DNA from: Vitrella brassicaformis CCMP3155
Taxonomy: Eukaryota > Protista > Chromerida
Direction of reading: 5' to 3'
Length of the DNA: 64,000 nt
NCBI GenBank assembly: GCA_001179505.1
Contig: CDMY01000224.1
Coordinates: 62,001-126,000, forward strand
Shown in pieces: positions 7,651 through 60,830 of the stretch. Made by a program: the position numbers and the translations under genes. The stretch's first letter is position 1. Each line of letters opens with the position of its first letter. The notes under the pieces are model-generated. The model had not been told where the DNA came from. It saw only the letters and a program-made list of their open reading frames with translations, and made no database searches.

Positions 7651-7785
7651 GGTGGATTCGTTTCATGAAAAATTCGCAAAAGCTGCCGTCTCGGCGAGAA
7701 TTCGAGTATGAGCTCGCAGAACAGGGTTCTCCGTGAAACCGCTCTCAGGGGAGGCGAAGGGGAGGAAAAAGGAAGAAGCACGAGC

Positions 7786-8611
7786 ATGAGCACTGCCTCA
7801 TCTATGCCTTCTAATTCACCTTTGGCCAGCTATTTCCATGGGAGATCTTTTCTTGCTCTACTCATCGTGATGCTGACGGAGGTTTGGTTCCGCACATCAC
7901 AGGGGAGGGAGATCCGCAACACTAATCCATCCACAATGCCGCAGCGGACACAAACGGGGTTCATGCACCCAGCCGGACCATCACTACAAAGCTTTCAGGT
8001 GAAAGAATCAACACGACAAGCTGAGCGAAGTACCCTTGATGAATGCTGCTGCTTCTTCTTACGCTGTCGCAGGTGCAGAGGCACAGGAGATGTTCCCTCT
8101 CTGGCGATGACCCATCATCATCACGTTCCTTCTCTCTCCATCCACCGCCTCTCTGGCGGCTGCCGTCCTCCGTGGCCCACACCACCGCCTTGGGTGCCAA
8201 GGTGCGTCGTCAGAAGCAGCAGAAGACGACAGAGAAGAAGAAGGACCGCGACGACCGGCTCGAGATTGACGGATCCGTCGCCGAGTGCCTGCCGGGAGGA
8301 CAGTTCCTCGTCGAACTCGACGGCACCGGGCAGAAGGTGACTTTGACATGATTCCTTTCTCCATCACGCTCGCTGCCTGGGTGTGATGTCTGTGTTTGTT
8401 GCTGTAGGTGGTGTGCACGATAGCGGGCAAGATGCGCATCAACCGGATCAAGATCCTGCTGGGTGACCGTGTGACGGTGGAGATGACGCCATACGACCTC
8501 ACCAAGGGCAGGATATCATTCAGGTACAGAAAAGGCCAGATCAAGCGAGAGGCTGAGGAGGGCGAGGAGGAGGGCGGAGAGGAGGGGGAGGCGGGACGGC
8601 CGAATGAGTGA
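7786..8611 (+). CDS. infA: Translation initiation factor IF-1, nucleus-encoded, probable plastid targeting
   Basis: Exons 7786-7881, 8073-8336 and 8408-8611, all phase 0. [21 protein letters not shown]...[39 protein letters not shown] is canonical bacterial-type IF-1. The N-terminus has a hydrophobic segment followed by an S/R/P-rich transit-like peptide. Confidence 0.95.
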
Positions 8612-9015
8612 GAGAGCGAATGAGTGGATGTGTGTGAGTGACGGAGGCATTTTGATCCGTTTTGATGTGCGTGTCTGTGTGGGTGTGTTCCTTGATTGCG
8701 TGTGTGGTGTATTTTTCACAGCTGCCGCCGGCAGCTTCCATGGTGTGTGGTGCATGCATGATGCATAGACGGATGTTGACTGTACAGACAGACACCTTCC
8801 CTCCATGTGTTTCACCAGTGGGTTGCGAATGCAGCCGTCAGTCATGTGGACTGGACACGAGTATCTTTGAATACCACTGCGATCGATGCGATGCCATCAA
8901 CTAATCAATCAACCATGTCAGTGATCCCCCAACCCACCCAGCCCACCCCAGGCTATTTATTATTCACAGCCTCTTCTCCTCCATCTGTACACCCTGATGC
9001 TAACTAACACCCATG

Positions 9016-10788: not shown

Positions 10789-11012
10789 GGTTCTCCCTCC
10801 TTGACTGCCGATCGCTGGAAAGCTCGCAGGTTGCGCAGATCTCCGGCCTGAAACCGCTGCTGCAGATCTCCGGATCTGATCTCTCTTTGCAGCCAAAGCA
10901 AGCTCCACCAGGTACGCAAGTAAGGAGTGCGCAACACTTCGGCCACGCGCGCCATCTTTCTTTCTCTGTTGTACGTGTTGGCTGCAGCTCCTCTCCCTCC
11001 CTCTCCCCTCTG
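10789..11012. promoter_or_regulatory. Candidate bidirectional promoter with AGATCT x2, GAAACCGCT and GCTCGCAG
   Basis: AGATCT at 10837 and 10864 and GAAACCGCT at 10850, between divergent start codons. Confidence 0.55.
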
Positions 11013-14169: not shown

Positions 14170-15700
14170 GTTTGGTGTGCTTGCTGATTTAACCGAGGAG
14201 AGATTCTTACTGACAGAGAGAGATATTTCACAGCCAGCGGTGTCATCTATGGATTGATGTGTGTGACATACAATAAGTCCATCGAAGTGCACACGAAGTC
14301 AGAGCGCACTGCATGTGGAAGAGGGTCGGTCGGGTGGCCTGGAGTGGGGTAAGACGTCCATCATGTCGTCATTCATGGTGCGTCAAAGGCAGGCCGGCAG
14401 ATATCCATGAATGCCTGAAGTCCGTGCATACAGTGCTGAAGTGCACACATACAAAGTGAGAGCGTACTGCACGTGGAAGAGGGTCGGTCGGGTGGCCTGG
14501 CCCAGTGGGGCGAGACATCCCGCATTGCATGCATGGTCTTCATTCATGGTGCGTCAAAGGCAGGCCAGCAGATATCCACGGACGGGTGGTTTGAGTTGGA
14601 CTTGCGTGCCTGAGACTGACTGGCTGGCGAAGCCTCCCTGTGTGTTGCCTCCTTTCTCGTCTGTGTCTGTCTGTCTGTCTGTCTGTCTGTGCGTGTGTCT
14701 GCATGTGTCGAGGCCGAGAGGGCCCGATGTATTACATGCATACATAAATACCTACAGCCATACAGCCGTGCGGCCTCTTGCTCGGTGCCTGGTTTCACTG
14801 TCTGGTTTTTATTTGTTGATCTACCAGCATCGGTTTAGGCGTTCCTTATGTCGTCGGCTTTCATCCATTCATTCATTCACTAATGTGTTGTTTGGGGGGC
14901 TGGCCAGGCCGGATCGCATGGATGTTCTATGTGTGGCTTTCCTGCACGCGTGTGGCGTGGGTGTGTGGGTGGACTCTTTTATCACGACGACACACACATC
15001 ACATGACATCACACGCCGGGTATGCCTCTTTTTGCTGATTTAGTGGAAGAGAGGTTCTTTCTCAGAGAGAGAGAGATTTGACAGCCAGAAGGGTCACGTA
15101 TGTATGGATTGACGTGTGTGACATACATACAAGGAGTCCATCGATGAGCGAAGTGCACACAAAGTGAGAGTGCACTGCACTGCTGGTGGTTTGTCACCCC
15201 ATAAAGGAGTTTAATCCATACCTTCTGCACAGGCAGGGCAAGGTGCGCCACACACATACACACATACGCCTACATACGCTAAGACTGACTGGCTGACTGA
15301 TTTGCGGCGGATGGATGGATGGATGGAGCTTCCCTGTATGTCGGTTGCGTCCTTTCCCCTCTGTCTGTCTGTCTGTCTGTCTGTCTGTGCCTAGCTGCAT
15401 GTGTGTGCATGTGTCGAGGCCGACAGGGCCCGATGTAATACATACACACCCACAGCCCTACCATCCATACAGCCGTGCAGCCTCCCACAACTCGGTAGTG
15501 TGCCTGCCGCTGGAGAGGCTCATGAGATGCATGAGATGGGAGCTCTGGGTTGGGTGCATTGCATGCGGAGTGTTTATCATCCATATGACATTCATTCATT
15601 GCTGCTGTGTGCTGGTTTCCCAGTCTGTCTGGTTTTTGTCCGTTGTCCATCGGTCCAAGGCCTTCCCTTCCTTACTCATGTCGTCGGCATTCGACCATCC
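14170..15700. repeat. Degenerate non-coding tandem duplication (two roughly 800-bp units, with an internal ~130-bp duplication in the first)
   Basis: 14185-14312 resembles 15040-15185; 14283-14408 resembles 14436-14578; 14660-14790 resembles 15360-15490; 14800-14845 resembles 15615-15660. Confidence 0.8.
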
Positions 15701-15844
15701 ATTCATTATCGTTCTGCGGTGTGGACGTTTCGACGAACCGATAGATACGCGATGTGATGCATGGAACAAATTGCGATTACCAAATGGACAGTGACCGACT
15801 CGGCAGAACCCACCCATCCCACCCACGATCGCGTCAGTCAGTGG

Positions 15845-18800
15845 TCACGTCGCCAGTGTAGCACGGGAATCCTCACTCTCATCATCCCCCTCTTGTCTGG
15901 CCTTGTCCTTCCTGTCTCCTCTCTCCCCCTCCCCTTCATCCCGATCCTCATGCTCATACTCATCGTCCAGCCCCACCCCACCCCTCTCAGCAGCAGCCCG
16001 TCTCGGCCGCACCGTCCCGCCCCCAGTACTACCCGCAGCCCGGCTGTACGCACTCTTCACACGCCACTTCTGCTGCTGCTTCTTCGCAAGCGCCCGCTCT
16101 CTCATCTCCTCGGCATCCTCGTCCTCATGCCAATCACACTCACCACCGCCACCGCCGGCCGATCCTGCCGCGGCGTCTCGCTTGCTGGCGACGTCGCTCA
16201 GGCGCTTCCAGTCGTCTGTGTGTGTTGAGGAGGGCAGCTTATTGGTGTGGGTGACGGGCGGGGTGAACTCGATGAACTCCTTGGCTGCGGGGACGAAGGT
16301 GGAGACGATGCGGGCGAGGAAGGACCGGAGGGAGCGGTCCTTGACGGCGTTGAACAAGTCGCGCAGGTGCACTGAATGAACCGCCCAGCCTGTGGGAAGA
16401 GAAGAACGGACATGCTAGAGTGAGTGGCTGGGTATGTGATGTGTGGGCACTTGTGGTCGGTTACTCACTGACCGAGCAGCGACAGCTGCCTTTGCCTGAG
16501 CTCTGCTGACGCCAATGGGCGGCTGGAAGGGGCAACCAAATCCTAACAAACACACACGACATAGGGGGGTGCATCATTCGCAGGTGTGTGAGTGAGTGTG
16601 TATGCGCTGATGGTGTGCTGATTGATGGTGTGGTGTGATACGATCTCACCTGGAAGTTGAGGACGTCGATGAGGTGCTTCTCGAGTGGGAATGCCACACT
16701 GACGCGATAGATGTTCTCCAGCGTGTGGGCAGTCTTGTGCGCAACCTTCAGCTGAGAGATGAACAAAGCCAACACGTGTCTGTCTATGGTGTCCGTCTGT
16801 GTGTGTCTTTGCGGTGCGTATGTGCTTACCTGGATGAGCGTCTCCGACAGCCACTTGTCATAGTTATAATCCTTGACGCGCAATCGCTTGTCCATCCTGT
16901 AGCCAGCCGTTCCGGTCAGGACCAATTGGTGCCCCTTCTCCCTCCCTCCCTCTGGCCACCTGTATTTGGCGCCTCCTTCGTAGACATAGAGGTCCGCCCT
17001 GGGGCACGCCAAGACGTCTTCCAGGAAGGCCACGAGTGCGTCGGATGCAGGGGGGTCCAGCCCGCTGGGCTTGAGCTTGAGAGCGTGCAGGGCCACCTGC
17101 TGCGCATGCATCAGCTCCTTCGGCAATTCATCCCCGAAACCCCTGAGCGAGCGACAAGAGAGAGAGAAGCATGCACCAGCAGCTTCGCTTGTATGCCTTG
17201 TGGATGTGTGTGTATGTGTGTGACCTGACCTGGCGATGTCTTCGAGGAGTGGCGTGAGGTACTGCTCCTCGCTGGTGACGACGCACACCCACGCCAGCCG
17301 CAGAAGCGCCTCAGCGGCCTCCTTGGCACCATCCTTCAACACATCACCGCTGAAGGGGTCGTCCTCACCCTGCCAATAATGACCCATGTACAAACATGTT
17401 TGCCATTCCTCAGAGGTGTCTGTCTTGTCTTGGTGCTCGTATACAAGCACCTCACCTGGATGTGCACGTTGCCCCCGCGGTATTCGGCCCGCCCGACGGC
17501 GGCCTTTTGTTCCGGTGTGCCGTATCGCTGAGTGAGAAAGTGCACCACCACCGGACGCACCCAATCCATCTTGAGACTTTGCTGCACTCACACCACACAA
17601 CCAACCCCCTACACACATGCAGTGCAAGCTTAGCTAAGCTAAACTAAGCCAAGCTGTGTTAGTCGCCCCCCATCCCTCTCACCGACCGACTGCCTCACCT
17701 CAGTGAGTGTCCACAAGAGGTAGCAGAGCATCAGAGGCCTGGGGCGCTCGCCCTCGGTCTCGATCAGGTGCTGCACCGTGTCGACGATCTTGTGCACAGA
17801 GTCGTCCTCAAACCCAATCCGGGCACACGCGTAGCACAGCACAATCATCGACTGCAGGTCGCTGTCCAGCCGCGCCAGCTGAGCGAGGTTGTCGCTGATG
17901 GCCTTCTGCACACGAGGGCGGCGGTGTATGTGGGTCCTCACGAGGAGCCGGTCGTCAGCTGGCAGGTACGAGAGGCTTCCGACGATGCGCAGGAAGTCCT
18001 CGGGGTCGCCTGAGCGGAGGAGGGGTGCGAGTTGCCGGAGGATGACGTTGGTGAGCTGGTCGTCGGTGATGTTGAGTTCGTGCATCGCCTCAAATAGGTC
18101 CGCCACATTCGCTGCCGTGAAACACCTACACACATCCAGACATCCACCCACCAATCCATTCACCTGTGCGTGTGTGTGCGTGTGACCATCTCACTGACCA
18201 CCAGGTTCTGATGCGTTGTCGGATGGCGGTGAGTAGCTGGTCGATGAGTGTGGGGCTCCTGAGGTTGTTAGGGCACTTGGTGAGTACGTGTAGGATCTGC
18301 ACGCAGTCCTCAGCGAAGATGCTCTGGACCTTCTTGCTCGTCAGCTCCAGCAGCGCAGGCACCACGGGGTGCGACAGGTACTCGGCCTCGTACAGACCCA
18401 CCAGCGTCTGCACTATGTTCTCAGGGTACAACACGTGCTTGCGCTCCAAGATCTCCAGGACAGACATGAATGACCACACGCAACACACACACACATCGAT
18501 GCGTCCAGAGGAGACTCACCCCCTCTCCCCCCCCCCCTCTCCCCATCCACACAGACAAGACAGACAGACAGACAGACCGACTCACCTGGTCGCATAAAGC
18601 GCTGTAGAGCTTTGCGTCGGTGACGCCTGCCGCACCGAAGCCGTAGACAGCGCGGGAGAGCTGCAGGGGTGAGAAGGTGCCGACTAGCTTGAGGGCCTGC
18701 TGCTTGAGTCCGGCGAAGAGCTCCTTGTGTGCGAACTCCGCCTGTGCGAGGGCCATGGCGACGCTTGAGATGTCGTGGGCCGTGAACTGCTTGACCTTGG

Positions 18801-21100
18801 GCAACATCGAGGCGGCAAGGTCCGAGAACAGATCCGGGTCAGATACGCCTGCAGGACACACAACACACGCACCCAGAGAGAGATGGCATGGATGAGATGG
18901 GTTGGCCCTTGTTGTGTTGCATCTGTGTAAACAAACGCTCGAGCGTGGTACCAGCATTTGCATACGCCCACGCGACGGTGCAGAGGTCCCTGGCTGCCAG
19001 GTCCAGCATGAACGACCGGATGGTGGGCGAGATGGTGAACTTGAAGAGCTCCTCGTCGGCCTCCTCCACCCTGCTCATGGCCCAGGTCAGCTGCACCACG
19101 TCGCGCACCGTGCACTGCTCCACCTGCCGCTCCAGAGACCGGCGGATCTTCTTGAACAGACTGGGGTCGGTGTAGGACATGCTGGCGAAGGCGTGGGCCA
19201 CCCCGGCGATCTCCTGCATGGAGAACTGGTCCATCCCCTTCTGCACCTTCTGCGACAGCTGCGCGAACAGATGGGGGTCCCGCACATCCAGCTTGGCCAG
19301 CGCCGAGCACACCACTGTCAGGTCGAGGGGCGTCTTGAACTCCTCATACCGATACTTGACGGCCTCGACGAGCTGCTCCTTGAGCGGCATGGCCTCCTTG
19401 ATGGCGAACGACAGCTTTGAGAGGCAGAAGAGTGCGGTGCTGAGGTGCTGGCCCTCGAACTTGGGCACGTGCTGCGTGCACTGCACCATCAGTGACGGCA
19501 GCCACTTGGGGGCGTGCTCAAGCTTGACCAGACCCCAGAACAGGTTCACCAGCCCTTGCGGCCCAAGGTGCACCAGCATCCTCTCGGCAGCGACCAGCAG
19601 CTCCACGAACCGCTCGTCCTTGACGATCGTCTGCCGCTGGTACGGAGTGACGTAGCGCCCCAGCCGATGGACGGCCGTCGTCACGTTGACCTCGTCCATG
19701 TGCCCGATGTTGCCGCCCACAGTGGTGAGGATGGCCGCGACGCTCCTGGCCTTGACGAGCTCCTGCTGCACCTGCAGCCGCTCGGGAGCCATGTTCATCC
19801 ACGTCTCCACCGGCAGCTTGGTCGCCGCACGAACCAGCTCCGCGGGGGAGTGGGCGTCCACCTCCGTCGGCGGCGCCGTCACGTCGGCTTCGTCGCCATG
19901 GCGAGCGGGAGAAGTGTCGCCCTGGCCGAAGAGCATGGCACGGATCTTGGCCTTCTCCTCTTTCTCTGACAGAGACGGCTCCTGCCCGATGTCGTCAATC
20001 AGCGCGCTGCCTCGCACCATCCTCAGCTGCCCGTGGTCATCCCTCTCGCCGAGCCGGTCCATGGCCTCTGCAGCAGGCTTCTGCAGGGGCCCGGTCGTGG
20101 CATTGCTCTCGTGTGTCGCCTCTTCTTTGGCCGCTGCTGCTGAGTAGATTGATGCGTCGCTGGAGGTCTCTGCCTCCAGCTGAGAGAGGGAGGCCAGGTC
20201 GAGAGCAGACCCAGGGGTGGTCTTGCCCCTGGTGCTGTGGCTGTGCTGTGCCGCCCGGTCCTCCTTGTCCCAACTGGGTACGCCCTTCATGCTGCCGCCC
20301 GAGGGGAAGAGGTCCCCCTCCCCTCCCTCCCCCTCGTCGATGGCCGGCAGCCTCCTGCCGTCGGCCTTGTCCTTGTGCCTGGCCTTCTCCTCCTTCCTCC
20401 TCAGCTGCCTCGCTGCCAGGCTCTCCCGCGTCTTGGCCACCTTGTGCAGCTCCTTCTCCCTGATCTCCTCCCAAAACGTCTTCTGGTACAGCGGCTCGTC
20501 TGTCTTGAGGTCGCGCAGAGAGAAGCGCGACTTGCCCTTGTTGCGCCGGCCGGCATCTTTGTCCATCTCCTTGAGCGGCAGATCGTCCTCGTCTGCCTGG
20601 CTCATCGTGGACTTGCCGGCCTTGCGCTCCAGCCGCCCCCCCTTGCCCCTCCTCGGCATGGCCTCGGCCTCCACCTCCTCTGTGGACTTGAAGAGAGTGC
20701 TGGGGTGTGCCCCGTAGCGCATCTTCCGGCGGAAGCTGGAGCTGGTCTCCTCTCGGATGATGGACGTGTACGATGCAGGCGTGTAGGATGGTTCGTCGTA
20801 CTCATCCCTGCCGACCTCCCCCTCCTCAAAGGACTCCTCGAAGGCCTTGGCACGGTCACCAGCGCCGCCCGCACTTGACGACATGCCTGCCGCTGCAAGC
20901 CGGACATGCTGCAAGGCCGGGATGGATGAGGGCTGAGACGGGCTGCCGGAGAGAGCCACGCGATGAATGAAGGAGGGGAGGGGAGTGGTTGCATGGCGAG
21001 CACTGCACTCGGCGCCGGCTGGATCTGTAGTTTGTGCCAGTGGTCTTGGGCGCCGCAGGTTGCCGCGATGAATGCGGGATGAAAGCTTTGACGGGATCAT
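15845..21100 (-). CDS. Large helical-repeat (heptatricopeptide/OPR-type) organellar RNA-binding protein with C-terminal RAP domain
   Basis: Counted repeat periods of 37, 37, 38, 37 and 37 aa (DLTVVCSALAKL..DPHLF, EIAGVAHAFASM..DPSLF, DVVQLTWAMSRV..DEELF, DLCTVAWAYANA..DPDLF, DISSVAMALAQA..HKELF). RAP-like end YRVSVAFPLEKHLIDV...LRQRQLSLLGWAVHSV. The R/S-rich N-terminus resembles a mitochondrial presequence. About nine exons. Confidence 0.9.
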
Positions 21101-21435
21101 GAAACGAAACCCCTGGATGTTGACCAGCTGGGCTCCCTAGCCCCTACAGCCTCACCAAAAGAGCCAGATCTTCGCTCTCTAGCTCGAAGAGAGAGCGGTT
21201 TCGAAGATCTGCGAGCTCAGACTTGCCGTGTTGGCAGAAGGGAAAGAAGGAAACAGGCAGCAAAGACACAGGTGAGCAGCCTTCAAAGTGGGACCACCCA
21301 AGCTGGCTCGATGATCTTGATGCCTGTGTGTTGCTTTCCTGCTGCCATGTCAGATTCGTCGCTCCCTCCCCGTCCCCCATCCCCTCCCCTCCTCTCCTCG
21401 CCCTCCCCCCCCATCCCATCCCATACAGATCGACC
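21101..21435. promoter_or_regulatory. Candidate bidirectional promoter with AGATCT x2 and AGCGGTTTC (reverse complement of GAAACCGCT)
   Basis: AGATCT at 21166 and 21205 and AGCGGTTTC at 21194. A probable 5' intron lies at about 21272-21428. Confidence 0.55.
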
Positions 21436-22650
21436 ATGGCCTCATCCTGGCAGGACAGCGATTGGCAAACCATGTGCTTGCTGATCAAGGAGAGTCAGAA
21501 CGTCGACGGCGGCCTTTGGACGCAGTACATCGAGCGGGCCTCCAAGACCAAGCGCGACCCCACATGCCACGACTGGGAGTTTCTCGCACGGTTCCTCACC
21601 ACGGCCGCCGGCAGCAACCCCGTCGTGTCGGCCATGGCCCACCGGGCGCTGCAGGCCAAGCAGTACGAGGCCGACAAGACCTGGGACGCCCTCGTCATGG
21701 CCACGCAGGGCCACCCCTACTTCCACAGATTCTACGGACCACAGATCTACACCAGCGAGGACCTCCCTGGCTGGGTGCGGGCGCAGGCGTCGACCAAGGT
21801 GCCGCAGGAGCGCAAAGTGCTGGCCATCAAGACCATCATGGTGCGGACAAGCGAGGACGCGCGAGCGGTGCTGCGGTGCGTGCTGGTTGACGCCGACGGC
21901 AAGGTGGTGCTTGACGACTGGGTCAAGCCGTACGGCTCCATCACCGACGACGTCAAGGCCTTTGGCACCACCCCGGAGCAGATCGAGGCCACCTCGACGA
22001 TGCGCGAGCAGCTGCAGCAGAAGCTGCTCAAGCTCATCAGCCCCGACACCATCCTGCTGGGCCACAACACGGCGCAGGACCTGTGTGCCATCCGGCTGCA
22101 CCACGCCAAGATCGTCGATGTGGGCCTGCTGTGCCGCTCCTTCGACAACCCCCGCCACGCCCCCACACTCAAGGAGATCTACGAGACCATCGCGCGCGAC
22201 AACGAAGCCATGGGCCCGCGCGACACTGACGACAGCGAACCCGCGTCGGCGGCCCGCGTGCTGGTGGACGTGGGTCGTCACCTGAAGGACCACCGGATGG
22301 ACAAGCCCAAGAGCCACCCCACCCCCAAAAACGTCGACAACGGCGGACGGCAGGAGCAGCAGTCCAAGCTCTTCGTCCACAAGATCCCACGCATGGTGCG
22401 GCCGGAGGAGATCCAGGCCCTCTTCCAGCCACAGCCGGTCGTCGGCAACATCAAGATGTCGTCTGGCGGCACCTGGTCGGCCCTCCTGGACTTCGGCAGC
22501 CCCGCTCTCGCCATGGCCATGTTCGACAGCGTGCCGGGCAGCACGGGCCAGGACACACGGGGGCGGGCGCAGAAGTCCCTGTACATCCCACTGATGTTCA
22601 ACAGCAGCGACACCCAGTACGTGGAGATCAAGATACAAAAGGCCGGCTGA
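21436..22650 (+). CDS. SDN-like (small RNA degrading nuclease / REXO1 family) DEDDh-fold protein with C-terminal RRM, catalytic residues substituted
   Basis: Uninterrupted CDS. N-terminal GLWTQYI...DPTCHDWEFLARFLTT and HPYF..Y......W, exonuclease fold VLVDADGKVVLDDWVKP...TILLGHNTAQDLCAIRLHHAKIVD, and RRM KLFVHKIP...AMFDSVPG..GQDTRGRAQK. This matches plant SDN architecture as recalled. Confidence 0.85.
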   Translation: MASSWQDSDWQTMCLLIKESQNVDGGLWTQYIERASKTKRDPTCHDWEFLARFLTTAAGSNPVVSAMAHRALQAKQYEADKTWDALVMATQGHPYFHRFYGPQIYTSEDLPGWVRAQASTKVPQERKVLAIKTIMVRTSEDARAVLRCVLVDADGKVVLDDWVKPYGSITDDVKAFGTTPEQIEATSTMREQLQQKLLKLISPDTILLGHNTAQDLCAIRLHHAKIVDVGLLCRSFDNPRHAPTLKEIYETIARDNEAMGPRDTDDSEPASAARVLVDVGRHLKDHRMDKPKSHPTPKNVDNGGRQEQQSKLFVHKIPRMVRPEEIQALFQPQPVVGNIKMSSGGTWSALLDFGSPALAMAMFDSVPGSTGQDTRGRAQKSLYIPLMFNSSDTQYVEIKIQKAG

Positions 22651-25827: not shown

Positions 25828-28013
25828 ATGGAGCCTGGCTGTCCAGAAAGAGTCTCGCTGACAGTTGACCTTTTGCGAGAGTGTGTGCGGCAAGATGTTC
25901 TATCTCGCTTGCGCAAGTCTTTTCCAACCACGTTCAAGGTGAGGTTCTCAACAGATCAGCTCGAGGCAGATCTTGGCACGGGAGCTCACGATGTGCCTGA
26001 CATTGCCTGTGTCCACAGACTCACCTGGGCATCCCTCCCGTCAGCCCCGAATCGTTCAATGCATTCATGTTTGAGGTGCTTGCGCACTCATCGGTCATAG
26101 GGGGCAGTGACCGGAATGAAGAGCTGCTGCCGGGATATGAATTGACAGTGGCCGATGGCAGCCCTTCACTCAGGAATGCCGTATGGCAGGTATGTGGGAC
26201 AGCAGGAACTCACTCACATTGAATGTCACGTCTCTCACGTCTGTCTGTCTGTCTGTTGCCATGGCGCATCAGGTGTTTTTCAGAGGTGTGCAAAGCGGGA
26301 ACAAGTCCGTCGATGCATTCCTGGCGGCAGCCAACGGGTTCCTACAGGATGAGGGGCACATAAAGGAGCTGAGGACGATGATCGATCGTGCCCGACAAAG
26401 CGACGCCGCCAATCCGTTGGTGTGCGACGGAATACAAGAACGATTCATGGTAGGACGACGGCAGGAGGCAGTAGGTCACACGCGCAGACACACGAACACA
26501 CACATGTGATGTCAGCCCTCTTCTTCTCCTCTTTGTATGTGCTTCAGGCTTGGGTCAACGAGCGGCTGGCTGTTTGCCTGCCTTCCCTCCTATCTGTTCT
26601 TCAAGAGGAGCTGACTCAGCTGCAAGGCAGCTTCCGAGAGCTGTGTGAGTCGTCTTTGGCCATGATGGACCAATCCATCCTCCCGGCGACAAAGCGGCGC
26701 AGAACCGATGGCGAGACGAGTCATGCGGCAGACATATCTGATGCTCTTCCAGGTTGTGTCGTCGTTTCCGAGGTGAAATGGATCGACAAGCAAATGCACA
26801 CTCATTGTTGAATGTTCCTTTTCTCGTCAGGACGGCGGTAAGAAGACGGTGTGCTTCAGCCTGGACCCAGCCCTCACAGCAGCTTCGTCTGTGATGCGTC
26901 GCATGAACACGGCTCACGAGATCCGGCGAGGGCATGCCGTTAAATTGTGGAGGAGATATTTCACTAGTGATGCATCACGGTCTGCACATCGAGCCACAAG
27001 AGATGTCAGCCTCGATGAGGACGATACCGATGCGTCTTTCGCTGACCTGCAGGTGGGCACTTATGCATCTTGCAAAGCGACGGGGTCGCACCTGTGTGGG
27101 TGTCGTATTCAGGGTGTCATCTGTCGGCGAGTCGACGGACCTCATAATGCTGAAGCCATCGATGCCTGTCGTATTCGCTTCAACCATGCCGTGTGGATCC
27201 TCCTCCACAGATATCAGGTCAAAGACTTCATTGACACGGCACGAGGCCCCATCCTACATCGGTCCGTATCGGTCCGTCTACTTTTATTGCAGACATTGTT
27301 CGGTCCTCGTAGTGGAGAGGGTAGCGGCTGGCAGCTAGCGGCACCATCAGCCGTGCATGATATGTTGAGAGAGGTCTTTGACGTCCATCACGAGTGTTTC
27401 GCGTCGCCCCTCAACGCTCATCACTCGACCTTCAACTCGCTTTTTCCCGATGTTGACAGGCCCTTCGGTAGTCGAGGAAGCTTCTTCGCCGACGAGTCAT
27501 TCTCGGGCGGCGGCGCGTATGAAGTAGGCCCGCCATACGACGTCGGAGTGATGGAGCGAATGGTAGAAAAGCTGCTGTCACATCTATCCACAGCCAAAGA
27601 GGTGAGGACACATCCAACCAGCCAGTCGATCACTCAGCCAACCAGAGGGGGTCGGTTAATGTGGGTGCGTCTGTAGAGTGGCGTTTCTCTTTCTTTCTAC
27701 CTGGTGCTCCCTGATTGGGACGTGTCGAGCATTAATCGACTGTTCAACTGTCCGTTCCACCAATGGAGCTTCACGCTGCCTAAGAGGCATCACAGGTGAC
27801 ATGCGCAAGCACACAGGAGAGCATCACCGTGGCTCGCCTGTGTGCACACCGTGCAGATACTGCAGCGGACTTCAGCATCAACGAAAGAACAAGCACCAGT
27901 ACGTTCTGTGTGAGACGCCGACATTAATGATGGGGCTTGAGACGCGCCCAACGACAGACAGGCCTGTAGATCCAGACGTGCTCAAGTCGTTGATCAAAGC
28001 ATGGATGCCTTAG
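25828..28013 (+). CDS. PCIF1: PCIF1/CAPAM-like cap-adjacent adenosine N6-methyltransferase homologue
   Basis: LLHRYQTLFG...EGSGWQLAAP...FDVHHECFASPLN...SLFPDVDRPFGSRGSFF...YEVGPPY...LSFYLVLPDW...HHRYCSGLQH are PCIF1 core motifs. Multi-exon; the 5' exons are uncertain. Confidence 0.9.
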
Positions 28014-40177: not shown

Positions 40178-40334
40178 GACGAGGGATAGCCGACAATGAC
40201 AATCGAAAGATCTATCTTCTGCCAGGGTGTGGGAGTCTGGATGCCCCAATCAGCGGTACCTGCCCCGTGGTTTTGACGCGGCCCTTCCCAGCTAAGCTCG
40301 CAGATCTGCGTCCCAGATCTGCCTTCATTTGGCC
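40178..40334. promoter_or_regulatory. Candidate bidirectional promoter with AGATCT x3
   Basis: AGATCT at 40208, 40302 and 40315 within a 157-bp gap between divergent ATGs, with GCTCGCAG abutting the second site. Confidence 0.55.
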
Positions 40335-46923: not shown

Positions 46924-46954
<31 letters not shown>

Positions 46955-52900: not shown

Positions 52901-53204
52901 CCGTTTCGCGCCATACCTGGGTCTCGCGCCAGCCTGACGGTGCCGTAGCCGAGCTGACCCATCTCGCCACTGCCCCTGAGCCAACGCACACACGCGCCGG
53001 CAGACACGAACGAAATGAACATGTATTCACGGTGGTTCACTCTGCATGTCTGTCTGCATGTGCCTCGTGGCGCTATCCTGCCCGCCTCGCTTTCTGCCTC
53101 TGCGCACGCTGCTGCCTTGGGGAGTGCCGTGATTCAACGTACCACGAGCAAATGACGCCGCCTCGCGGTCGCTTCCCCGCTTCATGGTAGCTGCCGCCCA
53201 GCAT
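46066..53204 (-). CDS. RCC1-repeat beta-propeller plus two BTB/POZ domains with low-complexity tail (probable Cullin-3 adaptor)
   Basis: Start MLGGSYHEAGKRPRGGVICSW|GSGEMGQLG at 53204. RCC1 repeats (ISGGDGHTAAVTSDGRLYTWGASACGQLG, VACGKAHTVAVT, CGDVHTLVLTKSGLVYSFGGGNFGQLG, CGDSHSTAVDKNGRLYAWG). BTB1 TLSDVSF...AHLSVIKARAPHL...LLYFLYTD and BTB2 ADVEIV...FLAHRCILASRSAYF...LLAFLYTD. Confidence 0.9.
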
Positions 53205-53449
53205 GCTATGCTCCCAATCGAATGGACGAGGAGTCAGTCAACAGGCAAGTGCTGTATTTGCGCCATTTCTTGCTAAGAACAGAAGAGGAACAGCGTTACG
53301 CCGACCTCTTGTCCCCTTCTGCAATCGCTTCAAGCTCGCAGACGAAACTGGCCTTCGAAGAAAAGTGCCTTCTCCGCTCCCATGCGCGTCCGCTGGTGCT
53401 GCTGAATGACATCTGCCTGGCGGGAAAGCTAAGATCTTAAAAGATCTGA
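53205..53449. promoter_or_regulatory. Candidate bidirectional promoter with AGATCT x2
   Basis: AGATCT at 53432 and 53442, immediately before the chlD ATG. Confidence 0.5.
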
Positions 53450-55883
53450 ATGTTTATTCATAGAGGAGCCGCTGCGTGCGCCGCGCTGCTTCTCGCCCTC
53501 TCCCTGCCCTTCCCACCATGTCAAGCGACCCGCCCACTGCGCCGCCAGACGTCATGCCTCGGCTTCGCCCCCTGCGTCACACCGTCTTCGCCCAGGCGCC
53601 ACCTGTCAGCATCAGTACGGCCGAGGAGGCCTCTGTTATCGATGTCGGCCACTGCCGTCATAGATGCGCCGCCAGAAGAGGCAGAGCAGAGGGCGGCGCC
53701 ACCCATCCCAGCGCGCGACAAGCCCACAGGTCTTCCCCTTTCTCTGGTGGTTGGCAATGAGCCGATCAAGATAGCCCTCCTGCTGGCGGCGGTCAACCCC
53801 CTGATGGGCGGCGTGGCTATCGGCGGCCGCCGGGGGACGGGCAAGAGCGTCATGGCCAGGGGGCTGCATCGGATCCTGCCTCCGTTGGAGGTGGTCAAGG
53901 GCAGCTCCTTCAACATCGACCCCAACAAGCCCGAGGAGGTGGATGATTTCCTCAAGGAGCAGCTGGCGGCGGAGAACAAGACGCTGGACCAGCTGGACAA
54001 GGACATCATCCCGACGCCCTTCGTGCAGGTGCCGCTTAACGTCATGGAGGACCGCCTGGTGGGCTCGGTCGACGTCGAGGAGTCGGTCAAGCAGGGCAAG
54101 CCCGTCTTCGCGCCAGGCCTGCTTGCACGCGCACATCGGGGGGTGCTCTACGTCGACGACCTCAACCTGCTCGATCCCGAGCTGGCCAACATCCTCCTGT
54201 CGGTCATCTCGGACGGCTGGGTGCAGGTGGAGCGAGAGGGCATTTCTGTGCGGTACCCGTGTCGCCCTCTGATCGTCGCGACATTCAACCCGGAAGAGTC
54301 GGAGATGCGCGAGCACCTGCTGGACCGGCTGGCTGTGAGTCTGTCGGTGGACGCCACGCCGCTGACCGACTTGGAGAGGGTGCAGGCCGTCGAGGGGGTG
54401 CTCAAGTTCGGCAACTCCAAGCACAATGAGCAGATGCTCAGGGAGGCCGAGGAGGAAGAGGACGAGCTCAGGACCAGAATCATATTCAGGTGGGTGCATT
54501 CATGACAATGACACACACATGCTGACTGACTGACCAGTCAGTCCATCGGATGGATCACTCGTGTGTCTTTGTGTCCTGTCTGTCAGTCGCGAGTACCTAA
54601 AGCGCGTCAAGTGCACTCACGACCAGATCAAGTACCTCTGCGAGGAGGCCGTCCGTGCCGGCGTGCAGGGCCAGCGCGCTGAGATCTTCGCCTGTGAGGT
54701 CGCCCGCGCATCGGCGGCCCTCGACAACCGCGACAGCGTCACATCCGATGACCTCAAGCTCGCCGTCAAGCTGGTCATCGCCCCTCGTGGCGTGTTCCTG
54801 CAGCAGCCGGAGAACATGATGCAGCCGCCGCCCCCTCCGCCCCCGCCCCCCCAGCAGGACACGTCTGATGAGGACACCGAGGAGGACAAGAAGGAGGACG
54901 AGAAGGACGAGGATGAGAAGGAGGAGGACCAGATGCCCGAGATCCCGCAGGAGTTCATGTTTGACGCAGAGGGGACGCCCATTGACGAGGAGCTCATCAA
55001 CTTCGTCACCAAGCAGCAGAAGGGCAAGAGCGGCGGCAGGGGGCTCATCTTCAGCCAGGACAGGGGCAGGTACATCAAACCCATGTTCCCAAAGGGCAAG
55101 GTCAGGCGGCTCGCTGTCGACGCGACCATGCGGGCGGCCGCCCCCTACCAGCGGCCGAGGCGGCAGCGGGCTCTGAAGGACGACAAGAAGCGCTTCACCA
55201 GCAGCGGCAGGGAGAGGAAGGTCTTCATCGAGGAGGCTGACGTGAGGGTCAAGCGCATGGCCAGGAAGGCCGGCGCGCTCATCGTCTTTGTCGTCGACGC
55301 GAGCGGCTCCATGGCCCTCAACCGCATGAACGCAGCCAAGGGCGCGGCCATCTCTCTATTGTCCAAGGCGTATGAGAGCCGCGACAAGATCTCCCTCATC
55401 ACGTTCCAGGGCACCGACGCAGAGGTGCTGCTGCCGCCGACCCGGTCGATCGCCATGGCCAAGCGGCGGCTGGAGACGATGCCGTGTGGTGGCGGCTCCC
55501 CGCTGGCGCACGCCATCAACGTGGCCGTCAAGACGGGCATCAACGCGCAGAAGAGTGGCGACGTGGGCAAGGTGGTGATAGTGTGCATCAGCGACGGGCG
55601 GGCCAACGTGGGTCTCAACGAGAGTGTGGAGAAGGGGAGGGTCACTGAGAGCGAGAAGCTGGACAAGGAGGCTATGAAGGCCGAGGTGCTCGACACAGCC
55701 AGGGCGCTGCAGGGGCTGCCCAACTTCCACCTGGTGATGCTCGACATGGAGAACAAGTTTGTGTCGACGGGGCTGGCCAAGGAGGTGGCCGAGGCGGCGG
55801 GGGGGAGGTACTACCAGGTGCCCAAGGCAACGGAGCGCTCTGTTACCGATGTCGCCGTCGGCGCACTGGCTATGGCCAGGTGA
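53450..55883 (+). CDS. chlD: Magnesium chelatase subunit D, nucleus-encoded with bipartite plastid targeting
   Basis: Exons 53450-54489 and 54587-55883. AAA+ (GRRGTGKS, LYVDDLNLL), Pro/acidic linker and vWA (FVVDASGSMALNRM) domains. A signal peptide is followed by an S/R/P-rich transit peptide containing LGFAP. Confidence 0.98.
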
Positions 55884-56164
55884 TCGATGGCTGGCCGAAT
55901 GGATGAGGGCATGCTTGGGTGAGGGGCAACCATCTGGCAATGCAGAAGGTGTGGGACGGTGCTATAATTGCGTTGCGTGTGTGCATGGTCATGTGTATGT
56001 ATGTATTTTTGATGGATGATACATGCATGATCGATTGTGCCTGCCGACGTGTCGAAGATTGTTGTGTGGCTGTCTATTGATAAGGATTCCATGAATGAGG
56101 GTTGGTCGATATCCCATGCAAACAGCGGAAAGAAAGTTCCATACGCAACCCATTTGCGAAGCTT

Positions 56165-57253: not shown

Positions 57254-57930
57254 ACCCCTACTCGCAGTCGGATCTCCTCACTCCCACCGGCACCATGCCA
57301 CTCGACGGCGCCCTCTACTCCAATATGGTTCCTCATGATGCGCCGGCTAACAACGGATCGGCAGATGTGTCTGTCGTTCCGTCGTCGGCAGCGCCACTGA
57401 AAATCACTCTCAGGTGGACGGGGCGAGAGTGGGAGGTGTTCTTTGGTATCGCCCCTGCCTATGTGTGTGTGTCGGCGCTGTGTGTGTCCACAGTGCCGGT
57501 GAGAGTTTGTACATTCCCTGGGGCTGGTGGCATTACGTCCACTACGACCAGGACTCCCTATCGGTCGGCGACACACACATCCACTGACACCTCTCATACA
57601 CACATCATATGATGCAGGCGATCCTCTGTCTGCTGGTGTGTTCAGGTGAATGTGGTCGGTTTCGATTCGGACGTGCGCACGTCGGTGTGGTATAGCGTGT
57701 TGGCGGTGGGTGTGGTGCTGCAGGGCATCAAGGCCTTGTGTGCCGGCGACTGGGCCACTGTCTCGTACTGCTCTCACTGGCACCCGACTACCTGCGGATC
57801 ATCAGTGTGTAGGACGGGATGGGACCGATGGTTGGATGGGGGTGTGTGCACTTTTGGACCTTGTATGTCCGTCTGTACGTGTCGATACACACATGGACTC
57901 ATTCATGGAGGTGAGACATGGGGCAATTGA
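56270..57930 (+). CDS. JmjC/cupin_8 oxygenase with N-terminal signal anchor, copy B (3' end approximate)
   Basis: Exons 56270-57055, 57124-57413, 57494-57563 and 57646 onward. Spliced protein has TPLHMD...IAGKKTFWLYP...TLSAGESLYIPWGWWHYV...SLSVNV, so the HxD...H Fe(II) triad is intact. Confidence 0.9.
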
Positions 57931-58062
57931 CATGGATTGGGTCAAAATTGTCTGTCCATCGGTCTGTCAGTGTGTTGATCAATCGGCTGTGCTGTCTGTG
58001 TTTGGGTCTTCCTTCGGTTTGTCTGTCTGTGCGGTTTGTCTGTGTGTCACTCGGTCCCTCTC

Positions 58063-60581
58063 TCACGAGAAGATGAGAATGCCGGGGTGGACGCGGAGGC
58101 AAGACAGCACCACCCGCAGCACACCGCTCTCATCCACAAAGTGCAGCAACGCCGCCTCATCTGCACCGCACACAAAGCGACAATGCCACAGACACTAAGG
58201 GAGAGACATCCCTCTCGGCTCACCTTTGAAGGCGAATCGGCAGAAGGGCTCCACCGAACGCGTCATCGAAAACGACTCAACCTGACACAGACAGACACAG
58301 AGAGAGAGAGAGGGATGTGCATGTCTCTCTCTGTATGTCATCTTTACTCTCCCTCACCTTCTTGATGACGTTGCGCCGTTCGTCAGCCGGGTGTACGAGT
58401 GTGATGTCGAAGCTGATGCGATACGTCGCCTCGTCCTCTGGCACACCGCCATCGCCACACCTGGCCTTCTTCTGATCATCCACACATGACAGGGCACACA
58501 GGGAGAGAGAGACATGGGTGTTGTTTTCCGCTGTCTTGTGGTTGCGTACAGTGATTGGGTCGTTGTGGTCGTGCGAGTCCTCAAGCCCACGCAGCTGGCG
58601 CTTGTTGTCACTCACTGCGTACACACACGCCGACACGTACCCATGGAACACTCAACTGTCGGCCGGCTGACCTACCGGTGTGTTGGTGGTGTGTGGAGGA
58701 TGACTGCTGTGCGGCGATGAGATGATAGAAGATGCTGCTCACGTCGGCAGGGCCCTTGGTGTTGGGCGTGCTCTGCGACGCACTCACTGGCGAACGAGCA
58801 GGTGTCTTGACAGGTACCTTCACACACACAGAGAAAAGATGTGGGGTGGGGTCCTGCCACTTCCTTTGTTCCCTCCTCACCGTCTGTCGTGGGGTCCGGG
58901 CAGGCATGGTGTTGTCCTGTGTCGCCGCCCGCTGATGGTACGAGACATGATGCAGCGACACCCTGGACACAACACACAACACACGCATTCTTCGCAGGCA
59001 GCCCATCGACACATCATCCGTCTCTCTGGCTGCAGAGTGGTCACCTACTTGAGCGACAGTGGGTTCTCTTCGATGAGTAGCGATGCAAACCAGGAATGGC
59101 CGGACAGCTGGAATCGAGGAGACAGGATCAGATTGGCTGCACATGCACAGACATATCAGTCTTGCAATGATGTCTCTCCACGCCATCCCACCCCCGCACA
59201 GACTTGTTTGTGCTTTGGTGAAGACATCGCCGATCTCCCACAGCACGTATCCCTCCTGCTGCTGAGGGGAGGGCGACGGGGGCGGCGGCAGACGGGCGGC
59301 AGCAGCACTCGCAGACGTGCTCTCGCGCTGCACCTCCTCAACCCTGTGTCACACACAGACACAGATGGGCCCATTCCCGCTGTCCTCAATGTTCGTGTTC
59401 GTTGACTTGTTGATTTTGGCTTCGAGTGTTTGGATTCTGTCTTTGTGTTTGATGAGCATGTCCTTGTAACACTCCGACGCGTGCGCCTCGAGCGACACAG
59501 CCTCAACCAACCTGACGACACAAACGACACAGCAACGGACACATGGGGGCCCTGTCTGTGTGTGTGTGCGTGTGCGTGTGCGTGTGCGTGTGGGTGAGTG
59601 GAGGTGTATGTGCTTCACTCACTCAATTGCACTCACTTGCCACAGAATCTGCATTTCTTGCGCTGATAGGGACACTTGGCGATGTGGTAGTGATAATCGC
59701 CGCGAGGTATGGCCTTGGGGCAACCGGCATTCACACACTTGAGCAACTCAAAGTCCTGCACGTGGACACCACAGACCAGCCAGCGAGACGACCTCTCGTC
59801 TGCAATGTGTCAAGATGCACACACATTGCCCGCCCGCCTCACGCATTTGTTGAGGTGTGCGGCATAGTCACTGTAGGCACCCTTCCTGCGTGTGAAATAA
59901 GTAAGGCCATGTGTGTGTGGTTTCGTTTGTGCGTGTGTGTGAGGACCATTCGCAGCCGGTTCGTGTCTTGGTCTGTGTATTGGATGCGGCGCTCTCAAAC
60001 GCCACACGGTCGTCTGAGAGAGATGAAACAAAGAAAATACATAAAACATGAGAGCTATTGTGGTATTTCTTCCCCATCGACAGACCGTAGTGTCTGCAGG
60101 AAGGTCACATACAAACACCACGCCAATGCCAATGAGATGAGATCGTGTCTTTCGTCCTTTGCTGGCCTTCCTTCGTCCATCTGACTGACTGACTTGCACT
60201 TGAGGTTGATTTTGCCTATCATGCGATACAGCAGACGGTTGGCCTGCTCCAGCGGCTGCACACACGACGCACCCGTCAGCATCTTCTGGCACGTTGGACA
60301 CGAGCGAGACCTGCGGGACACACACACGACAGACAGACACACATGCACTGAAAAGCACTTCCTTTCAGTTGTTCAGGTCTTGCCGACCGTGCGAGCCATC
60401 TCTCGAGGCATGAGCGGCAGTAGATGTGTTCGCACTCGGTGATGACGGGCACCCACACGAGCCACGAGCAGATGGAGCACCGCATCTCGTCGCTGATGAA
60501 GGTGCCGCCGACGTTGGCCAGCAGCTCGTCGGGGATGCCCTGGCACGGCTGCTCAAACAACTCGCCACCGCCAGACGACAT
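58063..60581 (-). CDS. TRAF-like E3 ligase: RING (C3HC4), TRAF-type zinc fingers, coiled coil and MATH-like C-terminus
   Basis: CSICSWLVWVPVITECEHIYCRSC...CPTC, GCEW-GAYSDYAAHLNKC, KCVNAGCPKAIPRGDYHYHIAKCPYQRKKCRFC, LEAHASEC, and C-terminal YRISFDITLVHPADERRNVIKK...LLHFVDESGVLRVV. The MATH call is tentative. Confidence 0.75.
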
Positions 60582-60830
60582 CGTTGTGCACGAGGAACGA
60601 AGCAGCAAAGCAATGAATGAAATGAATGTAAACTCGCTCGAGTTTCACGGAACGGCGATGCGCTTCGGCCGGTCACGTACCTACAGTGCCATGATGAATA
60701 GATAAAGCCAGGAGATCTGGTTGGCTGCGGACCATGGAGATCTTGCCCGTCTTGCTGACGTCGCTGCTCATGTTGAGGCCAGGGGATAAGAAGTGGAGGC
60801 GCCTCAGTAGAGCCAGATCTCGGCAAATCG
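60582..60830. promoter_or_regulatory. Candidate bidirectional promoter with AGATCT x3
   Basis: AGATCT at 60713, 60738 and 60815, between the RING gene and the ARM gene. Confidence 0.5.

What the first reader, a model, noticed from the sequence alone, without database searches (positions are those of the whole stretch)
7700..60830. Shared motif set (AGATCT, GAAACCGCT, GCTCGCAG) in divergent promoter regions
Seen: I count 14 AGATCT sites in or next to seven head-to-head gene junctions (7843; 10837, 10864; 21166, 21205; 25968; 40208, 40302, 40315; 53432, 53442; 60713, 60738, 60815). That is roughly 2.5 kb, compared with about a dozen sites noticed by eye in the other ~61 kb. Two of the 14 (7843, 25968) fall just inside my gene models. 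The 9-mer GAAACCGCT occurs at 7735, 10850 and, reversed, 21194. GCTCGCAG occurs near 7712, 10823 and 40297. Inference: a palindromic core-promoter or transcription-factor element specifying bidirectional transcription; I do not recognise it as described. The motif choice was post hoc and the counts are manual.
Basis: seen in the sequence. Interest (0 to 1): 0.75.

Follow-up and report, generated by a model that had tools for sequence, protein, structure and literature searches.

The report
Promoter word set of Vitrella alga
Three short DNA words that recur in the gaps between back-to-back genes of the alga Vitrella brassicaformis (a free-living relative of malaria parasites) are real, genome-wide parts of one undescribed promoter layout, built around AGCTCGCA at the point where RNA copies begin.

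Summary
A crude coding map confirms seven head-to-head junctions. The window is Vitrella brassicaformis CCMP3155.

Independent tests:
- In another 200 kb of the genome, AGATCT is 3.4-fold and AGCTCGCA 9.9-fold denser in divergent gaps than elsewhere. Composition-matched palindromes are flat.
- Genome-wide, AGATCT lies within 30 nt of AGCTCGCA 955 times, against about 120 expected, and GCTCGCAGATCT occurs 127 times.
- GAAACCGCT lies 5-35 nt downstream of AGCTCGCA 247 times (about 2 expected), against 34 in reverse order.
- Flanks are unrelated, so this is not a repeat family.

The one transcript I could map (Mg-chelatase ChlD) starts 4 nt after AGCTCGCA.

Reading: AGCTCGCA is an oriented start-site element. 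AGATCT is a palindromic accessory site clustered within about 150 nt of it. GAAACCGCT is the core of a ~24-nt downstream module. That AGATCT specifies bidirectionality is unproven: it also occurs at tandem promoters and inside the ChlD 5'UTR.

About a quarter of the modules are flanked by locus-specific 7-15-nt direct repeats, which is unexplained.

The scan found these words before in other windows of this genome. One earlier follow-up rejected AGATCT; my counts contradict that. No paper in the library holds these words.

The parts
7711..7718 (+). AGCTCGCA core, junction 1
   Evidence: exact match; next ATG on this strand is at 7786
7722..7748 (+). downstream module ...TCTCCGT-GAAACCGCT-CTC (GAAACCGCT at 7735-7743), 16 nt after the core
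   Evidence: same order and orientation as 247 genome-wide copies
7843..7848 (.). AGATCT, probably inside the first coding exon (codons G-R-S of the ORF from ATG 7786)
10821..10828 (+). AGCTCGCA core, junction 2
10835..10873 (+). GAAACCGCT (10850-10858) flanked by a perfect 12-nt direct repeat GCAGATCTCCGG (10835-10846 and 10862-10873); the two AGATCT sites (10837, 10864) are the two copies of this repeat
21210..21217 (-). AGCTCGCA core for the minus-strand FASTK/RAP-like gene, overlapping AGATCT at 21205-21210 (the 12-mer GCTCGCAGATCT)
   Evidence: conserved in the environmental relative L021
21194..21202 (-). GAAACCGCT, 7 nt after the core; this segment is replaced or deleted in the ~97% identical contig L021
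21166..21171 (.). second AGATCT of junction 3 (kept in L021); a one-mismatch core AGCTCGAA lies at 21181-21188 (+)
25968..25973 (.). AGATCT, junction 4; no exact core nearby
40208..40213 (.). AGATCT, 31 nt upstream of the first in-frame ATG (40177) of the minus-strand ORF 39710-40177, whose status as a true product is not shown (found only on unspliced contig L173)
40295..40320 (+). AGCTCGCA (40295-40302) overlapping AGATCT (40302-40307), second AGATCT at 40315-40320; first ATG at 40335
53333..53340 (+). AGCTCGCA core of the Mg-chelatase ChlD gene
53344..53344 (+). 5' end of the longest ChlD transcript contig (L053, Logan SRR646408); JGI contig L052 starts at 53356
   Evidence: 100% identity, spliced 54489/54583
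53432..53447 (.). AGATCT pair (53432, 53442; 10 bp start to start), transcribed within the ChlD 5'UTR
60713..60820 (.). three AGATCT sites (60713, 60738, 60815) in junction 7, 132-234 nt upstream of the minus-strand ATG at 60581; no exact core

Best explanation
The three words are parts of one compact promoter layout used at thousands of Vitrella brassicaformis genes. In this compact genome that layout often sits in the short spacer shared by two back-to-back genes.

(1) AGCTCGCA is a strand-specific element at the transcription start. It points toward its gene, and RNA begins at or just after its 3' end.

(2) AGATCT is a palindromic accessory site concentrated within about 150 nt of that core. 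Its preferred positions are overlapping the core's 3' end (AGCTCGCAGATCT), or 8-9 nt upstream where a second, inverted and often degenerate core sits back to back. It tends to come in pairs with short gaps. Most likely it binds a dimeric factor on DNA.

(3) GAAACCGCT is the core of an oriented ~24-nt module, TAGGgtgCTCC(C/G)T-GAAACCGCT-(CTCTC or GCTGC). It lies 15-45 nt downstream of about 3% of the cores, so it is probably transcribed into the start of the 5'UTR.

Shown here: the enrichment, the order, the orientation, the spacing, and one transcript start.

Inferred: that these elements bind factors and position RNA polymerase II.
For: Independent 200 kb (C227): AGATCT 17 sites in 31 kb of divergent gaps against 26 in 165 kb elsewhere (3.4x, p = 1.7e-4). 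AGCTCGCA 9.9x (p = 2.5e-7). Ten control palindromes are not enriched.

De novo k-mer ranking puts both words first.

Genome totals: AGCTCGCA 7,692 (reversed control 2,061); AGATCT 18,192 sites.

Coupling of AGATCT to the core:
- AGATCT then AGCTCGCA with a gap of 0-30 nt: 599.
- AGCTCGCA then AGATCT with a gap of 0-30 nt: 356.
- About 60 are expected each way from the genome-wide density.
- Gaps of 8-9 nt alone give 93.
- GCTCGCAGATCT occurs 127 times against 0 for the reversed control.

Position: around 49 cores outside the window, AGATCT density rises from 0.3-0.6 per kb to 2-4 per kb between -150 and +50. Controls stay flat.

Homotypic AGATCT pairs: 574 against about 141 expected.

Module: AGCTCGCA then GAAACCGCT with a gap of 5-35 nt occurs 247 times, against about 2 expected and 34 in reverse order.

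Not a repeat family: the flanks of 30 copies are unrelated, and the downstream genes are diverse.

Orientation: 6 of 6 cores in same-strand gaps point along the genes.

Transcript start: ChlD RNA contigs begin at 53344 and 53356. The core ends at 53340.

Conservation: the environmental relative L021 keeps AGCTCGCAGATCT and the second AGATCT.
Against: - Only one transcription start could be mapped here, and an assembled RNA contig can miss its first bases.
- The other RNA-derived contig (L172) starts about 160 nt downstream of the motif cluster, away from any of the three words. It may be truncated.
- About 94% of AGATCT sites are not within 30 nt of an exact core, and many lie in coding sequence. 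Most single sites are therefore background.
- Junctions 4 and 7 have AGATCT but no exact core.
- ATG depletion downstream of the core is weak, because 5'UTRs here are long and carry upstream ATGs.
- My gene map is a crude codon-usage segmentation, not an annotation.
- GAAACCGCT was not significantly enriched in divergent gaps of the independent 200 kb (2 against 2).
Confidence: 0.75

Rival explanations
1. AGATCT itself is a palindromic initiator. CAGATC fits the animal initiator pattern YANWYY on both strands, so transcription would start inside it in both directions.
For: - In AGCTCGCAGATCT the ChlD-type start offset (+11 from the core's first base) would fall inside AGATCT.
- Perfect 20-bp palindromes AGCTCGC-AGATCT-GCGAGCT exist, shown by overlapping + and - hits of the 12-mer on contigs C255, C304 and C563.
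- The commonest 5' neighbour is C: CAGATCT accounts for 25 of 64 half-sites in divergent gaps.
Against: - In ChlD both AGATCT sites lie 90-105 nt inside the transcript, and no contig starts at them.
- The 5' neighbour is C in only about 39% of sites.
- AGATCT is spread over +/-150 nt rather than held at one offset.
- It also accompanies tandem promoters.
Confidence: 0.2
2. The GAAACCGCT module, and through it some AGATCT pairs, is the product of a short insertion or templated-repair process that duplicates its target. It would then be a footprint of promoter turnover rather than a selected binding site.
For: - 8 of 35 modules are flanked by locus-specific 7-15-nt direct repeats, against 2.3% at 16,605 control positions (p about 1e-6) and 4 of 114 pseudo-anchors in cores without the module.
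- Among the eight repeat-flanked modules, the piece between the two repeat copies is 9-26 nt long and always includes GAAACCGCT.
- At 10835-10873 the two AGATCT sites are simply the two copies of such a repeat.
- The segment differs between the window and the ~97% identical contig L021.
- Cores are also often tandemly duplicated 7-40 nt apart.
Against: - The strict order, orientation and conserved 24-nt consensus across 247 copies argue for selection on function.
- There is no family of longer source elements: bare GAAACCGCT is only 1.3 times its control.
- L021 is not a clean empty site.
- Origin by insertion and present function are not exclusive.
Confidence: 0.2
3. The words act in RNA, as 5'UTR signals for translation or stability, rather than in DNA.
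For: - The module lies downstream of the inferred start.
- The AGATCT pair of ChlD is transcribed.
- The module carries a small inverted repeat, AGGG...CCCT.
Against: - AGATCT is a palindrome and is at least as dense upstream of the core as downstream of it.
- AGCTCGCA precedes the transcript start.
- Predicted hairpins in the module are weak (0 to -10 kcal/mol) and inconsistent between copies.
Confidence: 0.12
4. Chance, base composition, or a dispersed repeat or transposon family.
For: The motif choice in the window was post hoc. GCTCGCAG alone is not significant in the window.
Against: - The enrichment replicates in an independent 200 kb, and composition-matched palindromes are flat.
- Reversed-pattern controls give 0-4 against hundreds of hits.
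- Flanks of 30 loci share no similarity.
Confidence: 0.02

Closest known systems
Initiator (Inr) and TSS-proximal core-promoter elements of animals and protists
   Same: Short and strand-specific. Lies at or next to the first transcribed base and is present at thousands of TATA-less promoters. CAGATC matches YANWYY.
   Different: AGCTCGCA does not match any initiator consensus I know of (from memory). The position relative to the start was seen for one gene only. One-mismatch variants number 41 in the window, against 70.6 +/- 8.8 in shuffles.
Human TCTCGCGAGA palindrome of TATA-less bidirectional promoters (recalled from memory, not tested)
   Same: A short palindromic word in shared spacers of divergent genes. 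Shares the string CTCGC. A subset here forms perfect palindromes (AGCTCGC-AGATCT-GCGAGCT).
   Different: Different sequence, and an unrelated lineage. Here the main element is oriented, and the palindrome AGATCT is separable from it. No functional test.
Plant telo-box (AAACCCTA), found downstream of the TSS of many housekeeping genes (memory-based lead only)
   Same: An oriented short word just downstream of the start. GAAACCGCT shares AAACC, and the module carries a TAGGG about 10 nt upstream, which resembles a telomere repeat.
   Different: Only 5 of 8 letters agree. No evidence for a Myb/TRB-type binder. The downstream genes sampled show no shared class.
Head-to-head gene clustering in chromerid genomes (Woo et al. 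2015, PMC4501334)
   Same: That paper reports that closely spaced genes in Vitrella and Chromera are head-to-head more often than chance. This is the setting of the present finding.
   Different: The paper names no cis-element. 'Motif' and 'promoter' occur there only in the reference list.

Membership tests
Core-promoter element at the transcription start (Inr-like) | Fixed position at or next to the first transcribed base | tested here: inconclusive
   ChlD: the longest RNA contig starts 4 nt after AGCTCGCA and a second starts 16 nt after it. This is one gene, and contig ends are approximate.
Core-promoter element at the transcription start (Inr-like) | Strand-specific and pointing toward the gene | tested here: met
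   6 of 6 cores in same-strand gaps are co-oriented with the genes. None lies in 49 kb of convergent gaps, apart from one AGCTCGCG.
Core-promoter element at the transcription start (Inr-like) | Enriched at gene 5' ends genome-wide after composition control | tested here: met
   9.9x in divergent gaps of an independent 200 kb. 7,692 sites against 2,061 for the reversed control.
Core-promoter element at the transcription start (Inr-like) | Mutation shifts or abolishes initiation | not testable with these tools
   Needs reporter or in vitro transcription assays.
Bidirectional-promoter palindrome | Palindromic word enriched in divergent spacers | tested here: met
   AGATCT is 3.4x denser in independent data, and 8x in the window.
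Bidirectional-promoter palindrome | Specific to bidirectional rather than unidirectional promoters | tested here: not met
   All three tandem promoters marked by a core in C227 also have AGATCT within about 200 nt. The sample is small.
Bidirectional-promoter palindrome | Drives transcription in both directions | not testable with these tools
   No strand-specific 5'-end data could be reached.
Dispersed repeat / transposon (MITE-like) | Copies share sequence beyond the short words; terminal inverted repeats | tested here: not met
   The flanks of 30 composite loci are unrelated. The shared part is about 45 nt and has no terminal inverted repeats.
Dispersed repeat / transposon (MITE-like) | Target-site duplication | tested here: inconclusive
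   7-15-nt direct repeats flank 8 of 35 GAAACCGCT modules, against 2.3% background. No clean empty site was found.
ApiAP2 or other transcription-factor binding site | Bound by a named DNA-binding domain | not testable with these tools
   No paper in the library links these words to a factor.

The most novel reading that the evidence does not exclude
The GAAACCGCT module is not just a binding site. It would be a short piece of DNA (9-26 nt) that is copied into promoters 10-30 bp downstream of the AGCTCGCA-defined start and duplicates 7-15 bp of its target. Vitrella genes would then gain a shared 5'UTR or downstream promoter element through an insertion or templated-repair process aimed at transcription starts. 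Some AGATCT pairs, as at 10835-10873, would be by-products of that duplication.
Probability: 0.2. Interest if true: 0.85.

Novelty: new member of a known kind. Interest (0 to 1): 0.6.

Why it matters
Promoter architecture in apicomplexans and their algal relatives is poorly understood: no TATA box or canonical initiator has been defined for them (from general knowledge). Vitrella is the free-living reference point for how parasite gene regulation evolved.

This finding gives a sharply defined, oriented start-site word with about 7,700 copies, a palindromic partner and a downstream module, each with measurable spacing rules. That is a concrete, testable promoter code. It can be used to:
- predict transcription starts;
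- improve the annotation of 5' ends;
- design expression cassettes for chromerids;
- look for the binding factors (ApiAP2, Myb-like or general transcription factors).

The repeat-flanked module also hints at how promoter parts spread.

Tried and rejected
(1) Transcript starts for more genes.
- The search for homologous proteins gave the species' own protein only for ChlD.
- The single-exon 404-aa gene gave one RNA contig, starting at 21376, away from any motif, plus unspliced contigs that carry no start information.
- Contigs from run ERR558200 are unspliced or ambiguous.
- The representative search returned only the metagenome relative P0001.
- Twenty guessed single-exon ORFs were not in the collection.

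(2) A metagenome scan for the 17-mer TCCGTGAAACCGCTCTC gave 115 stretches. None of the 80 listed came from the Vitrella transcriptome sample (Ga0186167), so I read them as chance hits.

(3) Depletion of upstream ATGs as a proxy for the 5'UTR: only a weak signal. The median distance to the first ATG is 91 nt from the core's first base, against roughly 60 nt expected on the same scale. 5'UTRs here are long and carry upstream ATGs.

(4) Regulon idea: the genes downstream of the module are diverse (heme lyase, Ctf8, FKBP, MRG, LrgB, FASTK/RAP-like), so no shared function emerged.

(5) Non-coding RNA idea: no Rfam family and no tRNA in the window.

(6) Repeat-family idea: rejected, because flanks are unrelated.

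Full report
**What the window is.**
- The genome has 72.7 Mb in 1,064 contigs, and the window is contig C224:62001-126000.
- An exon of the window is 100% identical to the Mg-protoporphyrin IX chelatase subunit D of Vitrella brassicaformis CCMP3155 (P0122).
- G+C is about 59%.
- Real coding frames have G+C of about 0.8 or more at the third codon position. I used this to train a codon log-odds model and make a crude exon and strand map.
- The map shows seven minus-to-plus strand switches, at about 7.7k, 10.8k, 21.2k, 25.3-29.1k, 40.3k, 53.4k and 60.7k.
- The assembly gap (33029-33328) lies between two plus-strand exons, inside what another note calls a rhodopsin gene. It is not in any junction and does not affect the finding. 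Continuity across it could not be tested.

**The observation.**
- AGATCT occurs 27 times against 13.4 +/- 3.7 in shuffles.
- GAAACCGCT occurs 4 times against 0.35.
- GCTCGCAG occurs 8 times against 4.4, which is not significant by itself. Five of those eight are in junctions, and each extends to AGCTCGCA.
- 15 of the 27 AGATCT sites fall in my divergent gaps.
- The motif choice was post hoc, so I tested it on other DNA.

**Independent replication.**
- I fetched C227:1-200000 and mapped it the same way.
- A blind ranking of all 6-, 7- and 8-mers by enrichment in divergent gaps (40 kb of the 264 kb analysed) puts AGATCT first among 6-mers and AGCTCGCA first among 8-mers. AAACCGCT also appears in the list.
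- On C227 alone, AGATCT has 17 sites in 31 kb of divergent gaps against 26 in 165 kb elsewhere (3.4-fold, p = 1.7e-4).
- AGCTCGCA is 9.9-fold enriched there (p = 2.5e-7).
- Ten control palindromes (TGATCA, GGATCC, CGATCG, AGTACT, ACATGT, AAGCTT, AGGCCT, AGCGCT, GAGCTC, TCTAGA) show no enrichment; the nearest is TGATCA at 1.9-fold (p = 0.067).
- GAAACCGCT is too rare there to test, at 2 against 2.

**Genome-wide counts.**
- Totals: AGCTCGCA 7,692 (reversed control 2,061). AGATCT 18,192 sites, or 0.25 per kb. GAAACCGCT 1,135 (control 845).
- AGATCT followed within 0-30 nt by AGCTCGCA: 599.
- AGCTCGCA followed within 0-30 nt by AGATCT: 356.
- The overlapping 12-mer GCTCGCAGATCT: 127, against 0 for the control.
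- From genome-wide densities I expect about 60 on each side. With the promoter-local density of 0.55 per kb I expect about 130.
- Gaps of 8-9 nt alone account for 93 copies. Their spacer is usually GC-nnnn-(T)A, often a degenerate inverted core (for example AGATCT-GCGAGCT-A-AGCTCGCA). This peak is therefore the signature of two cores back to back, one of them carrying its overlapping AGATCT.
- Around 49 cores outside the window, AGATCT density is 0.3-0.6 per kb beyond 300 nt. It rises to 2-4 per kb between -150 and +50, with a peak just upstream. Eleven other palindromic hexamers stay flat, apart from GAGCTC, whose spike just upstream of the core comes from overlap with the core itself.
- In C227 only 3 of the 17 divergent-gap AGATCT sites are within 45 nt of a core. 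The enrichment is therefore not just the 12-mer.
- AGATCT also clusters with itself: 574 pairs with gaps of 0-30 nt, against about 141 expected. Gaps of 4 and 9 nt are over-represented among the 50 listed pairs. The window's pairs at 53432/53442 and 40302/40315 are of this kind.
- One earlier follow-up in this scan (s1-226983) concluded that AGATCT did not hold up outside its own stretch. My counts contradict that.

**GAAACCGCT is the core of a downstream module.**
- AGCTCGCA followed after 5-35 nt by GAAACCGCT on the same strand occurs 247 times, against 0 for the control. Chance expectation is about 2. The reverse order gives 34.
- The excess of the bare 9-mer over its control (about 290) is thus almost wholly explained by these copies.
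- Aligned on the 9-mer, 35 copies give the consensus TAGGgtgCTCC(C/G)T-GAAACCGCT-(CTCTC or GCTGC). The distance to the core is variable: gaps of 7-32 nt, median 18.
- The three junction copies in the window (7735, 10850, 21194) all have this order and orientation.
- Flanks of 30 such loci (L022-L051) are otherwise unrelated.
- The downstream genes are diverse: cytochrome c heme lyase, Ctf8, FKBP, MRG, LrgB-like, FASTK/RAP-like.
- It is therefore neither a repeat family nor an obvious regulon.

**Relation to transcription.**
- Cores in same-strand gaps point the same way as the genes in 6 of 6 cases.
- Three RNA-derived contigs of ChlD were retrieved. All are 100% identical to the window and spliced at 54489/54583. 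They start at 53344 (Logan SRR646408), 53356 (JGI 3300017148) and 53529.
- The core occupies 53333-53340. The longest transcript therefore begins 4 nt after it, and assembled contigs usually lack a few 5' bases.
- Both AGATCT sites of this junction (53432, 53442) are inside the 5'UTR. That 5'UTR is about 300 nt long and carries upstream ATGs.
- This agrees with earlier notes that place AGCTCGCA at or about 15 nt before RNA starts (s1-212014, s1-226983). Here it rests on one gene.
- For the 404-aa gene at 21436-22647 the JGI contig starts at 21376, away from any of the three words, and may be truncated. Other contigs were unspliced and uninformative.

**Conservation.** An environmental contig (L021, ENA ERZ893784) is about 97% identical to the part of window 20950-21500 that aligns. 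It keeps AGCTCGCAGATCT and the second AGATCT. In place of the 27-nt stretch holding GAAACCGCT it has 8 unrelated letters.

**An unexplained feature.**
- In 8 of 35 modules the 9-mer is flanked by a locus-specific direct repeat of 7-15 nt. The first copy ends 0-14 nt before the 9-mer and the second starts 0-6 nt after it.
- Such repeats occur at 2.3% of 16,605 control positions (binomial p about 1e-6), and at 4 of 114 pseudo-anchors in cores lacking the module.
- The piece between the repeats is 9-26 nt long and always contains GAAACCGCT.
- In the window, GCAGATCTCCGG (10835-10846) is repeated at 10862-10873. The two AGATCT sites of junction 2 are therefore the two copies of such a repeat.
- Cores themselves are often tandemly duplicated 7-40 nt apart: 11 tandem pairs among the first 100 sites, plus 3 divergent and 3 facing pairs.
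- This looks like target-site duplication or local duplication during promoter turnover. I cannot decide between those two.

**Interpretation.**
- The best-supported reading is a promoter code with three parts: an oriented start-site element (AGCTCGCA), a palindromic accessory site (AGATCT), and an optional downstream module (GAAACCGCT core).
- That AGATCT specifies bidirectional transcription is not shown. It occurs near the three tandem promoters sampled and inside a 5'UTR.
- A subset does form perfect palindromes centred on AGATCT, and CAGATC fits the YANWYY initiator pattern on both strands. That rival stays open.

**Literature.**
- No paper in the library contains AGCTCGCA, TGCGAGCT, GAAACCGCT or their composites.
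- Searches linking AGATCT to ApiAP2 or to core promoters returned nothing whose title or abstract concerns a promoter motif; the papers were not opened.
- The genome paper notes an excess of head-to-head gene pairs but names no motif (PMC4501334).

**Prior notes in this scan.** The scan has noted these words in many other windows of this genome.

Noticed in passing
L021 (ENA ERZ893784 contig k147_5008222) against window 18.8-22.7k: An environmental metagenome contig is about 97% identical, even in non-coding DNA, to this Vitrella locus, so a close relative or another strain is present in that sample. Its FASTK/RAP-like ORF runs 814 aa without interruption, whereas the window's ORF stops after about 720 aligned residues (an intron or a frameshift in the window).
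   Followed up: partly
window 53344-53642: The ChlD mRNA has a 5'UTR of about 300 nt with several upstream ATGs, including in-frame ones at 53450 and 53519. The annotated product (714 aa) starts at about 53642.
   Followed up: partly
window-wide: AGCTCGCA matches allowing one mismatch (41, of which 6 are exact) are fewer than in shuffles (70.6 +/- 8.8), while the exact word has 7,692 genome copies against 2,061 for its reversed control. The word appears sharply defined.
   Followed up: no
genome list (e.g. C7:7301/7313, C22:143847/143855, C33:62950/62970): About a third of the first 100 AGCTCGCA sites have another copy within 40 nt: 11 tandem pairs, 3 back to back and 3 facing. This suggests frequent short duplications in promoters.
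   Followed up: partly
window 7133-7160: A fourth GAAACCGCT, without an upstream core, sits next to a perfect TGACGTCA palindrome (a CRE-like word).
   Followed up: no
window 32789-32870 and 33616-33645: (GTCT)n / (GCCT)n microsatellite-like tracts lie on both sides of the assembly gap.
   Followed up: no
window 15364-22679 (L170, Logan ERR558151) and 20518-22679 (L171): Two run-derived contigs are colinear with the genome across the whole bidirectional spacer and across putative introns, yet both end at 22679, near the 3' end (22659) of RNA contig L172 for the plus-strand gene. This suggests pervasive or unspliced transcription across the promoter.
   Followed up: partly
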